DNA of 63,809 nucleotides, filler included, from Octopus bimaculoides (GCF_001194135.2; 5 parts of 5 records of this genome joined end to end with filler, not necessarily neighbours in it); one strand, 5' to 3'; counted from the whole stretch's first letter, positions 27 to 1,500 are shown. Program-made: numbers and translations. The notes: a model not told the origin generated them from the letters alone.

Positions 27-279
27 CTGGAATCTCTTCATACTGACTCTCCTTCCATGCCAGTTCATTCTCTCCTCCTCCTACTCCACCGCCTCCTCCT
101 CCTCGTGTTGATTCATACTGACTCTCCTTCCATGTCAGTTCACATTCCCCTCCTCCTCCACCTCCTCCTCCGCCGCCTCCTCGTGTTGATAATGTGTCAC
201 TGAGATAACTGGCAACAGTCATTGCATTCTGTTCTGTTGGTTCACCATATGATGTCACAGTTATCGGCCGGTTGTATAA
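27..279 (-). CDS. Pcdh: Probable second coding exon of the protocadherin (cytoplasmic domain)
   Basis: On the minus strand, the acceptor ctacttcag|tta is in phase 0, matching the phase-0 donor at 1501. The 253-nt open frame reads LYNRPITVTSYGEPTEQNAMTVASYLSDTLSTRGGGGGGGGGGGECELTWKESQYESTRGGGGGGVGGGENELAWKESQYEEIP(G). It ends at the donor CCAG|GTTGGT (27/26), followed by T-rich intron-like sequence. No transcript evidence is available. Confidence 0.75.
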
Positions 280-574
280 CTGAAGTAGATGATAATAAGT
301 GTGTGTATATTATATACATATATATATGTGTGTCTGTTTGTGCATAAATATATACGTATATCTGTGTGTGTGTGTATATGAGTGCTGGAGTGTTAAAGAG
401 TGAGAGAGAGGTGATCAATATGTGTTGGAATATATGGTGTATTGAAACCAAACTTTTTTTGTGACTCTTGTTTCATGTTACTGCAATCATCAGGTGATGA
501 TGTTCTCACCTAAAGATCACTGGAGAATGAAACTTGTATCACAAGATAAAAATATAGAAAATACAGGCTCAATA

Positions 575-607
<33 letters not shown>

Positions 608-608
<1 letters not shown>

Positions 609-830
609 GTGCTTTTTATGGACTCTGACCCCAGTGCCTTTTACATAGCACCAACATCAGTGCTTTTTTATGTGGCACCAACACCATACTTGAAAAACAA
701 ATAAGGTGGGGGGCTAACAATATGGATGACATTTGACTGTAAAACAAAGCCACATTGATACATTTGTCTAACCCATGCTGGCATAGAAAAACAGATGTAA
801 AACAAGTGAATGCTACATGTGTTTTTATGT
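608..830 (+). mobile_element. Degenerate RTE-type 3' tail repeat (SINE/LINE tail) in the Pcdh intron
   Basis: gtctaacccatgctggcatagaaaaacagatgtaaaacaag resembles the tail at 9290-9330 (gtccaacccatgctagcatggaaagcggacgttaaacgatg), with the CpGs decayed. Confidence 0.5.
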
Positions 831-1352
831 AACAATCTGGAGAAGGTGCACTCAATGTAAAGTGCAGTAGTTTTATACAAGCCAATCCAGTTGCTTGACC
901 ATTGGAAGTTTCTATCATTGGATTGGACTATGTGTGTGTGTGGGGGTTTGTTGTTTATGTTTATTAATCCAGCCATTCTCCTCCTACAACCACCTCTCAT
1001 TTGCAATCATTCTTCCACTCACACAGACATACGCATTGATAAACACAGACATTGAGGAACATCAATATCCATGCATACACACACACACACACTCATGCAC
1101 ACACAATAATAATTAACTAGGCATCTATACATACCCATGTACATACCCATGTACATACACATGTATTGAAGCACACAGAGACAGAGAGAGAAAGAGAGAG
1201 AAGAAAGAAGAGGGAAGACAGAGGGAAGAATAAGAGAAAGGAGGGTAAAGAGTAAAAGGAAGGAGAGAGTGTAAGAGATAGAGAGGGAAAAAGAAAGAGA
1301 GAAGAGACAGAGAAGAAGATTGAGGAGGAGAGAGAAGAGAGGGAAATGGAGA

Positions 1353-1384
<32 letters not shown>

Positions 1385-1500
1385 GAGAAGTGAAAAGGAA
1401 GATGAAAGAGAAAAATGAAGTAGAATTGACTTTTGTAATTATGAATTGAAATTAGCCAGAAATTAATTTTAGTTGATTAAATATGAAGAAGTTATCTTAC

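What the first reader, a model, noticed from the sequence alone, without database searches (positions are those of the whole stretch)
27..1500. Hidden cytoplasmic exon: the Pcdh has a large-ectodomain-exon plus small-tail-exon layout
Seen in sequence: the long ORF stops two codons after a canonical donor (TTG|GTAAGA). At 1.2 kb away there is a phase-matched acceptor, an 84-codon open frame and a second donor, none of which appear in the ORF track. Established: vertebrate clustered Pcdh-alpha/gamma join a large variable exon (EC1-6, TM, short tail) to shared small constant exons. Inference: this gene makes a long-tailed spliced isoform and possibly a short read-through isoform (...SALVR*). The small exon is a candidate for sharing between paralogs.
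Basis: partly seen in the sequence, partly recalled or inferred. Interest (0 to 1): 0.7.

Follow-up and report, generated by a model that had tools for sequence, protein, structure and literature searches.

The report
Octopus protocadherin's own small tail exon
The "hidden exon" is real, but it is the already annotated second coding exon of an Octopus bimaculoides protocadherin gene, and it belongs to that gene alone rather than being shared with sister genes, so the finding is correct but ordinary.

Summary
On the minus strand a 793-codon protocadherin exon (3879..1501) ends at TTG|GTAAGA, with a stop two codons later. A phase-0 acceptor at 281-280 opens a 253-nt exon (279..27), which ends at CAG|GTTGGT in phase 1.

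The window is 100% identical to O. bimaculoides chromosome CM046614.1. RefSeq XP_014775142.1 (903 aa) already uses exactly these junctions and adds an 80-nt third exon 7.3 kb downstream, outside the window. Orthologues in O. sinensis and O. vulgaris have the same junctions and an identical donor context. Exons 2+3 evolve with dN/dS 0.11-0.14, against 0.09 for exon 1, so they are translated in that frame.

Two paralogues mapped here have the same three-coding-exon plan, with intron phases 0 and 1. Each has its own diverged exons 2 and 3. No other cadherin-like sequence lies within 26 kb upstream. Published work also states that cephalopod protocadherins do not share final exons. The "large exon plus small tail exons" reading is therefore right but known, and the "shared between paralogues" idea is refuted. 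The read-through isoform is untested.

Minor extras:
- The donor looks derived, shifted about 10 codons upstream.
- Exon 2 carries an in-frame 75-nt duplication.
- Exon 2 ends in a family-conserved QYEEIP, the core of the classic Src SH2 ligand.

The parts
1501..3879 (-). Coding exon 1 (2379 nt, 793 codons): signal peptide, six cadherin repeats, transmembrane helix and about 75 aa of proximal cytoplasmic tail, ending ...DWKNSAL.
   Evidence: Translation. Pfam gives Cadherin_2 plus 5 Cadherin stretches, E=5e-68. Exact exon mapping of XP_014775142.1 onto L001 10001-12379, where window x = L001 13880-x.
280..1500 (-). Intron 1 (1221 nt, phase 0), GT at 1500-1499 and AG at 281-280. It is full of CT/AG-rich and GT/TA microsatellite tracts.
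   Evidence: It is 92% identical to O. sinensis in aligned columns and carries 780 gap columns, against 96.4-96.6% and no frame-breaking indels in the exons.
1465..1500 (-). Start of intron 1, probably the decayed remnant of the ancestral last ~10 codons of exon 1. The read-through VR*LLHI*STK aligns with paralogue (I/V)R(T/S)L(P/S)K.... It includes the TAA stop at 1494-1492. The donor GTAAGA coincides with the Val-Arg codons.
   Evidence: DNA and protein alignments with paralogues. All 14 paralogues aligned carry an extra segment of about 8-12 aa (xRxLPKxxxK) between WKTST and YSQP that only this gene lacks. The donor context is identical in three species.
27..279 (-). Coding exon 2 (253 nt, phase 0 in and phase 1 out): middle of the cytoplasmic tail, LYNRPITVTSYGEP...SDTLSTR(G)n...QYEEIP.
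   Evidence: Homologous to paralogue exon 2. Conserved in O. sinensis and O. vulgaris with dN/dS 0.11-0.14 together with exon 3.
37..190 (-). In-frame tandem duplication inside exon 2. The units are 78 and 75 nt (STR-polyGly-E(C/N)EL(T/A)WKESQYE), with GGN trinucleotide runs. This explains why exon 2 is 253 nt here against 157 and 169 nt in the two paralogues mapped.
   Evidence: TRF period 75, 2.0 copies, 83% matches. Unit sequences, paralogue exon lengths. The duplication is present in all three Octopus genomes.
28..45 (-). QYEEIP codons at the 3' end of exon 2, the most conserved tail motif of the family.
   Evidence: YEEIP occurs in 69 of 121 homologues and the relaxed Y[ED]E[ILVM] in 86 of 121. 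Y and the second E are invariant in the 23-sequence tail alignment A2.
1..26 (-). First 26 nt of intron 2 (GT at 26-25). The window ends here because the assembly has an N gap. Exon 3 (80 nt, ALENIEYSLSPKLDRKQCPDVNTKFL*) lies outside the window at L001 21118-21197.
   Evidence: N run at L001 13880-15329, exon 3 acceptor ttttcttttcag|CC, and G|CC = Ala closes the phase-1 codon.

Best explanation
Window 27-279 (minus strand) is the private second coding exon of a three-coding-exon Octopus bimaculoides protocadherin gene (RefSeq protein XP_014775142.1, named 'protocadherin beta-15', chromosome CM046614.1).

- Exon 1 encodes the signal peptide, six cadherin repeats, the membrane helix and the proximal tail.
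- A phase-0 intron of 1.2 kb joins it to exon 2, which encodes the middle of the tail.
- A phase-1 intron (7.3 kb in this gapped assembly, about 18.6 kb in sister species) joins exon 2 to an 80-nt exon 3, which encodes the last 26 residues.

The stop two codons past the donor is simply intronic. It most likely lies in decayed former coding sequence, because this gene's donor (the Val-Arg codons GTAAGA) sits about 10 codons upstream of the donor position in paralogues (inferred). The gene family grew by duplication of whole genes, tail exons included, so each paralogue has its own diverged copy of exons 2 and 3 and none is shared.

What is shown: exon positions, phases, conservation and purifying selection. 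What is inferred: that the annotated mRNA is the main product, and that the conserved QYEEIP at the end of exon 2 is a signalling or sorting motif.
For: - The window is 100% identical to GCA_001194135.2 CM046614.1.
- My spliced exon 1 + exon 2 product is 100% identical, over 100% of its length, to the 903-aa P0002 = XP_014775142.1.
- Exact mapping gives three GT-AG exons with phases 0 and 1.
- The O. sinensis orthologue XP_036364953.1 and the O. vulgaris orthologue CAI9733566.1 have the same SAL|LYNRP junction, the same exon 3 and an identical donor context, TCAGCTTTG|gtaagataactt.
- Nucleotide identity between O. bimaculoides and O. sinensis is 0.966 for exon 1, 0.964 for exon 2 and 0.963 for exon 3. 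Intron 1 is 0.92 with 780 gap columns.
- dN/dS is 0.09 for exon 1 and 0.11-0.14 for exons 2+3, with 8 synonymous against 3 non-synonymous changes, P=7.6e-4.
- The paralogue genes for P0007 and P0036 on the same chromosome have the same plan, with their own exon 2 (157 and 169 nt) and exon 3.
- Tails differ between the annotated paralogues.
- There is no other cadherin-like sequence in the window or its downstream flank.
- Literature: the family is described as multi-exonic PCDH genes with large ectodomain+TM exons, no shared final exons, and growth by full gene duplication.
Against: - I could not obtain any transcript or junction-read evidence. The RefSeq and GenBank models are computational predictions whose RNA support cannot be seen with these tools.
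- Short-query protein searches meant to find junction-spanning transcript fragments returned nothing useful. They did not even recover P0002 itself, so they are uninformative.
- The donor of exon 2 (GTTGGT) is only a moderate match to consensus.
- The donor-shift story rests on a short alignment of about 36 nt against two paralogue loci and 14 paralogue proteins.
Confidence: 0.9

Rival explanations
1. Vertebrate-style constant exon: exon 27-279 is shared and is spliced to several upstream large protocadherin exons from alternative promoters, as in vertebrate Pcdh-alpha and Pcdh-gamma.
For: - The large-exon/small-exon layout resembles the vertebrate variable/constant plan.
- Some octopod subfamilies have nearly identical tails on different ectodomains. 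In O. sinensis the tails are 95-99% identical against 81-96% for the ectodomains.
Against: - This exon's peptide occurs only in this gene and its two orthologues: a 90% cluster of 3 and no other hit among the best 120.
- The two paralogues mapped have their own exons 2 and 3 a few kb downstream of their own large exon.
- No cadherin-like sequence lies within 26 kb upstream.
- Even the near-identical tails differ by substitutions, so they are separate copies.
- PMC9068888 states explicitly that cephalopods do not use shared final exons.
Confidence: 0.03
2. Short-tail product: intron 1 is retained or the transcript is polyadenylated within it, giving a 795-aa protein that ends ...SALVR*. This could be a minor isoform alongside the spliced one, or the main product with exons 2 and 3 as relics.
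For: - The stop lies two codons past the donor and is conserved in three species.
- Vertebrate delta-protocadherins are known to make short and long tail isoforms (my own knowledge).
- Some octopod paralogues have annotated shorter-tail isoforms, for example P0046 against P0027.
Against: - Purifying selection on exons 2+3 equals that on exon 1, so they are not relics.
- GTAAGA is a strong donor.
- No AATAAA or ATTAAA occurs in intron 1 until window position 965, 527 nt past the stop.
- No gene product with exactly the read-through sequence is on record.
- RefSeq lists this protein without an isoform label.
- Conservation of the TAA is uninformative, because the whole first 24 nt of the intron are identical.
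Confidence: 0.2
3. Chance ORF or annotation artefact: 27-279 is not an exon. Gene predictors and the reader both picked a fortuitous open frame in repeat-rich DNA.
For: - Stop-free 84-codon windows are common here (3.8%), and other AG-plus-open-frame candidates exist in intron 1.
- Exon 2 contains GGN microsatellite and a tandem repeat.
Against: - Homology to the paralogue exon 2, including the motifs Y.(Q/R)P..VTS, SDTL and QYEEIP.
- Splice sites and phases are conserved in orthologues and paralogues.
- dN/dS is about 0.1 in the annotated frame.
- All length changes are multiples of three.
Confidence: 0.02

Closest known systems
Expanded octopod/coleoid protocadherin family (Albertin et al. 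2015 and 2022; Wang & Ragsdale 2017; Styfhals et al. 2019)
   Same: - It is a member: 100% identical to RefSeq XP_014775142.1, and 55-62% identical to over a hundred octopod protocadherins.
- It has the same three-coding-exon plan as the two paralogues mapped.
- It lies on the same chromosome.
- The literature describes these as multi-exonic genes with a large exon for the ectodomain and TM, multiplied by whole-gene duplication.
   Different: There are only gene-specific details:
- The exon-1 donor lies about 10 codons upstream of the family position.
- Exon 2 is enlarged by a 75-nt in-frame duplication and poly-Gly runs.
- Exon 3 has a unique sequence.
Vertebrate clustered protocadherins alpha and gamma (variable exon plus three shared constant exons)
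   Same: One large exon encodes EC1-6, the TM and a short proximal tail. Small downstream exons encode the distal tail.
   Different: - The small exons are private to each gene and are not shared (PMC9068888).
- No array of variable exons lies upstream.
- The papers read here report no analogy between octopus tails and known vertebrate cytoplasmic motifs.
Vertebrate non-clustered delta-protocadherins (PCDH1/7/9/11, 8/10/17/18/19)
   Same: From my own knowledge, this is the closest gene architecture: a large first coding exon (ectodomain, TM, start of the tail) followed by a few small private exons for the rest of the tail, with alternative short and long tails in some members.
   Different: - The vertebrate CM1-CM3 motifs were not found in O. 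vulgaris protocadherins (PMC6339937).
- Octopod genes sit in large tandem arrays.
High-affinity Src-family SH2 ligand pYEEI(P)
   Same: The exon-2 terminus QYEEIP contains the Y-E-E-I-P sequence used as the reference Src SH2 ligand (PMC2888578). It also fits the Yxx-hydrophobic sorting-signal pattern (my own knowledge).
   Different: This is only a sequence resemblance. Phosphorylation and binding are untested. The first duplicated copy reads QYESTR and lacks the +3 Ile.

Membership tests
Protocadherin (cadherin superfamily) | N-terminal signal peptide followed by about six extracellular cadherin repeats | tested here: met
   Pfam gives Cadherin_2 (E=1e-9) plus five Cadherin stretches (E=5e-68). 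A hydrophobic N-terminus, MLVSIYILISYIYCLFHVCLC, is seen in the translation.
Protocadherin (cadherin superfamily) | Single transmembrane helix and a cytoplasmic tail without the classical cadherin catenin-binding domain | tested here: met
   The TM segment VIIIVVAAVVVSVAVVIAITLCII is seen in the translation. No cytoplasmic Pfam family matches exon 1 or exon 2.
Octopod expanded protocadherin family with private tail exons | Close homology to annotated octopod protocadherins | tested here: met
   2416 hits at E<=1e-20. The top hit is 100% identical (XP_014775142.1) and the others are 49-62% identical, from Octopus and Argonauta.
Octopod expanded protocadherin family with private tail exons | A large exon for ectodomain, TM and proximal tail, then the gene's own small exons, with intron phases 0 and 1 | tested here: met
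   Exact exon maps were made for this gene, two orthologues and two paralogues. Exon 2 lengths are 253, 256, 253, 157 and 169 nt, all 1 modulo 3.
Vertebrate-type clustered Pcdh variable/constant organisation | A large variable exon encodes EC1-6, the TM and a short tail | tested here: met
Vertebrate-type clustered Pcdh variable/constant organisation | The same constant exons are spliced to many different variable exons | tested here: not met
   The exon-2 and exon-3 peptide is unique to this gene and its orthologues. The paralogues mapped carry their own exons. Tails of distinct O. bimaculoides models are at most about 70% identical. The literature agrees. Junction reads were not available.
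Vertebrate-type clustered Pcdh variable/constant organisation | A tandem array of variable exons directly upstream of the constant exons | tested here: not met
   tblastn with six family proteins finds only this gene's exons, in the 29.9-kb window and in 31 kb of L001.
Src-family SH2 docking site (pYEEI type) | Sequence Y-E-E-I, with a hydrophobic residue at +3 | tested here: met
   QYEEIP lies at window 45..28. It is conserved in 69 of 121 homologues. The reference ligand is described in PMC2888578.
Src-family SH2 docking site (pYEEI type) | The tyrosine is phosphorylated in vivo and binds an SH2 domain | not testable with these tools
   This needs phosphoproteomics or binding assays.

The most novel reading that the evidence does not exclude
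The exon-2 module, which ends in the near-invariant QYEEIP (the canonical Src-family SH2 ligand core and a Yxx-hydrophobic sorting signal), may be the octopod functional counterpart of the vertebrate constant region: a common kinase-coupling or endocytic output placed on every diversified ectodomain. In octopods it would be maintained as many separate copies by purifying selection or gene conversion rather than by exon sharing. In this gene's lineage the module was partly duplicated. I found no description of this cytoplasmic motif in the octopus protocadherin papers I could read. The motif table in PMC6339937 lists only EC, TM and PP1 motifs.
Probability: 0.25. Interest if true: 0.4.

Novelty: already known. 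Interest (0 to 1): 0.1.

Why it matters
It matters little as a discovery. The exon and both junctions are in the public RefSeq model, and the family's gene plan is published.

The check is useful in two ways. It also closes off the tempting vertebrate analogy, because octopus protocadherin diversity comes from whole-gene duplication with private tail exons, not from variable exons that share constant exons.

The side observations give modest leads on how octopod protocadherins signal, a subject the papers read here describe as unexplored. These are the conserved QYEEIP terminus of exon 2, its duplication in this gene, the derived donor, and the near-constant tails in one subfamily.

Tried and rejected
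- Short-query protein searches for junction-spanning proteins, meant to find transcript-derived fragments: (186 aa) returned only a paralogue fragment, and (90 aa) returned nothing. Neither recovered the 100%-identical P0002, so word-based candidate retrieval fails for these short, low-complexity queries and the negatives mean nothing.
- Exact look-up of the read-through product M...SALVR: not on record. This is weak evidence only.
- Look-up of the P0006 locus: not on record. P0007 and P0036 were used instead.
- Rfam scan of the window: no matches.
- ORF scan of the remaining 26 kb: only microsatellite-derived and N-gap-derived ORFs.
- Albertin et al. 2015 (PMC4795812) is not held in the library. 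Its content was taken second-hand from PMC6339937 and PMC9068888.
- I considered a profile search for the tail module outside octopods and skipped it. The answer would not change the verdict, and the representative library carries no names.
- I considered treating the ORF length itself as evidence and rejected it, because stop-free windows are common in this sequence.

Full report
**What is in the sequence**

The gene lies on the minus strand. The long ORF 1492..3915 has its first Met at 3879. It encodes MLVSIY..., six cadherin repeats (Pfam Cadherin_2 plus five Cadherin stretches, E=5e-68), a transmembrane helix and about 75 residues of tail ending ...DWKNSAL-VR*.

The DNA reads TCAGCTTTG|GTAAGATAA, with GT at 1500-1499 and TAA at 1494-1492. 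At 281-280 an AG follows a pyrimidine-rich run. From 279 a frame is open for 84 codons plus one base, LYNRPITVTSYGEP...SQYEEIP. It ends at 27 before GT at 26-25 (CAG|GTTGGT).

**Is it more than chance?**

Not from the ORF alone. The window is full of microsatellites, 3.8% of 84-codon windows in its non-coding part are stop-free, and intron 1 has several other phase-0 AG sites followed by 53-136 open codons. The case rests on comparison with other sequences.

**Identity of the locus**

- The window is 100% identical to Octopus bimaculoides GCA_001194135.2, chromosome CM046614.1.
- My conceptual splice (exon 1 + exon 2, 877 aa) is 100% identical, over its whole length, to a 903-aa database protein. 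That protein is RefSeq XP_014775142.1, 'protocadherin beta-15'.
- Exact mapping of this protein gives three GT-AG coding exons: L001 10001-12379, 13601-13853 and 21118-21197.
- In window coordinates the first two are 3879..1501 and 279..27. The third is an 80-nt exon 7.3 kb further on, outside the window.
- The acceptor of the third exon (ttttcttttcag|CC) completes the split codon G|CC = Ala. The exon adds ALENIEYSLSPKLDRKQCPDVNTKFL*.
- The window stops 26 nt into intron 2 because the assembly has an N gap there.

**Comparative test**

The 90% cluster of this protein contains orthologues from O. sinensis (XP_036364953.1) and O. vulgaris (CAI9733566.1). Both have the same SAL|LYNRP junction, the same exon 2 and the same exon 3. 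In their genomes the donor context TCAGCTTTG|gtaagataacttcttcatatttaa is identical, and the acceptors are conserved.

| Region, O. bimaculoides vs O. sinensis | Nucleotide identity | dN/dS |
|---|---|---|
| Exon 1 | 0.966 | 0.09 |
| Exon 2 | 0.964 | 0.11-0.14 (exons 2+3 together) |
| Exon 3 | 0.963 | (with exon 2) |
| Intron 1 | 0.92 in alignable columns, plus 780 gap columns | not applicable |

Exons 2+3 show 8 synonymous and 3 non-synonymous changes, P=7.6e-4 against neutral expectation. They are therefore read in the annotated frame and are under the same constraint as the ectodomain. This is the strongest evidence available here that the spliced long-tail product is the functional one. I could not obtain direct transcript evidence.

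**Is the small exon shared?**

No.

- The two O. bimaculoides paralogues mapped on the same chromosome, the genes for P0007 and P0036, have the same plan. Each has a large exon 1 (2376 and 2382 nt), a phase-0 intron, its own exon 2 (157 and 169 nt) ending at or just after ...QYEEIP in phase 1, and its own short exon 3.
- The tails of the 121 best homologues carry the same motifs but different sequences. Between distinct O. bimaculoides models the last 70 residues are at most about 50-70% identical, and this gene's tail is 14-55% identical to the others.
- tblastn with six family members finds no other cadherin-like or tail-like sequence in the 26 kb upstream of the gene or in the 10 kb beyond exon 3.
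- The literature agrees. [quoted passage not shown] **Why the ORF stops two codons after the donor**

All 14 aligned paralogues have 8-12 extra residues (consensus xRxLPKxxxK) between WKTST and YSQP. Only this gene lacks them.

The conceptual read-through VR*LLHI*STK aligns with that segment. For example, it lines up with TLVRTLPKSITK in P0005 and with ATC AGA ACA CTT... in the P0007 gene. The position of the paralogues' donor corresponds here to a sequence without GT.

The likely history (inferred) is that the ancestral donor was lost and the Val-Arg codons GTA AGA became the donor. That shortened the tail by about 10 residues and left decayed coding sequence, including the TAA, at the start of the intron. 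The change predates the split between O. bimaculoides and O. vulgaris/sinensis.

**Other features of exon 2**

- **Tandem duplication.** It contains an in-frame tandem duplication (window 37-190, TRF period 75, 83% matches) with units of 78 and 75 nt, STR-(Gly)n-E(C/N)EL(T/A)WKESQYE. GGN runs are also present. This explains its larger size.
- **Present in all three species.** The duplication is in all three species' genomes. The O. vulgaris protein model omits exactly one unit, which maps as a 75-nt GT-AG 'intron' inside the repeat.
- **Conserved QYEEIP terminus.** The exon ends in QYEEIP. YEEIP occurs in 69 of 121 homologues and a relaxed form in 86 of 121. Y and the second E are invariant in the 23-sequence tail alignment A2.
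- **Resemblance to a known ligand.** Y-E-E-I-P is the reference high-affinity Src SH2 ligand (PMC2888578) and also fits a Yxx-hydrophobic sorting signal (my own knowledge). Whether it is phosphorylated or bound is untested.
- **Not in the published motif list.** The octopus motif table in PMC6339937 lists EC, TM and PP1 motifs but not this one. That paper also reports no vertebrate CM1-3 motifs in octopus tails.

**Read-through isoform**

Nothing supports or excludes a minor ...SALVR* product. GTAAGA is a good donor, and the first AATAAA in the intron is at window 965. No such product is on record, and RefSeq lists this protein without an isoform label. It cannot be the only product, given the selection on exons 2 and 3.

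**Verdict**

The large-exon plus small-tail-exon reading is right but already annotated and published. The proposed sharing between paralogues is refuted. In gene plan it resembles vertebrate clustered protocadherins only in the large exon, and in its private tail exons it is closer to non-clustered delta-protocadherins (my own knowledge). Novelty: already known. Interest is low.

Noticed in passing
window 37-190 (minus strand, inside exon 2): There is an in-frame 75/78-nt tandem duplication with GGN (poly-Gly) runs. It duplicates the WKESQYE part of the tail motif and is present in O. bimaculoides, O. sinensis and O. vulgaris. The O. vulgaris model CAI9733566.1 removes exactly one unit as a 75-nt GT-AG 'intron' (L005 8244-8318). 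That could be an annotation artefact, a copy-number polymorphism or real micro-splicing.
   Followed up: partly
window 1465-1500 (minus strand, start of intron 1): The first ~12 codons of the intron still align with the last codons of exon 1 in paralogues ((I/V)R(T/S)LPK...). The donor GTAAGA therefore looks like a derived upstream donor, and the tail of this gene is about 10 residues shorter than in all paralogues examined.
   Followed up: partly
window 28-45; tails of P0001-P0121: QYEEIP, identical to the core of the classical Src SH2 ligand, ends exon 2 in most octopod protocadherins. More divergent long-tailed members have YEELP, YEELS or YETLP. I did not see it in the published octopus motif table.
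   Followed up: partly
proteins P0021, P0026, P0033, P0034, P0038, P0088 (O. sinensis); many Argonauta hians hits; P0001 and P0010 (O. bimaculoides): One subfamily has cytoplasmic tails that are 95-99% identical while its ectodomains are 81-96% identical. The tails still differ by substitutions, so they are separate exon copies kept nearly constant. This is a 'constant region' maintained without exon sharing, by selection or gene conversion.
   Followed up: partly
L001 13854-21117 versus L004 8425-27060 and L005 8391-26951: Intron 2 is 7.3 kb in the O. bimaculoides assembly, including N gaps of 1450 and 416 nt. It is about 18.6 kb in O. sinensis and O. vulgaris, whose loci have no gaps. The O. 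bimaculoides intron is probably under-assembled.
   Followed up: no
proteins P0003 (1504 aa) and P0010 (1102 aa), O. bimaculoides: These gene models look chimeric. P0003 runs from mid-ectodomain sequence (...IDIDYVSAINDNT) straight into a tail exon (KYCQPVVVTS...). P0001, P0124 and P0125 are TM-plus-tail-only models. They may be fused, truncated or pseudogene models within the cluster.
   Followed up: no
window 3916-29899: The 26 kb upstream of the gene holds no further gene-like ORF and no Rfam match. It contains only CA/TA/CT microsatellites and eight assembly gaps (N runs at 5924-6003, 9022-9218, 10411-10450, 12777-12818, 15330-15339, 20829-20838, 25224-25745 and 27350-27570). The long 'ORFs' listed there are repeat or gap artefacts.
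   Followed up: yes
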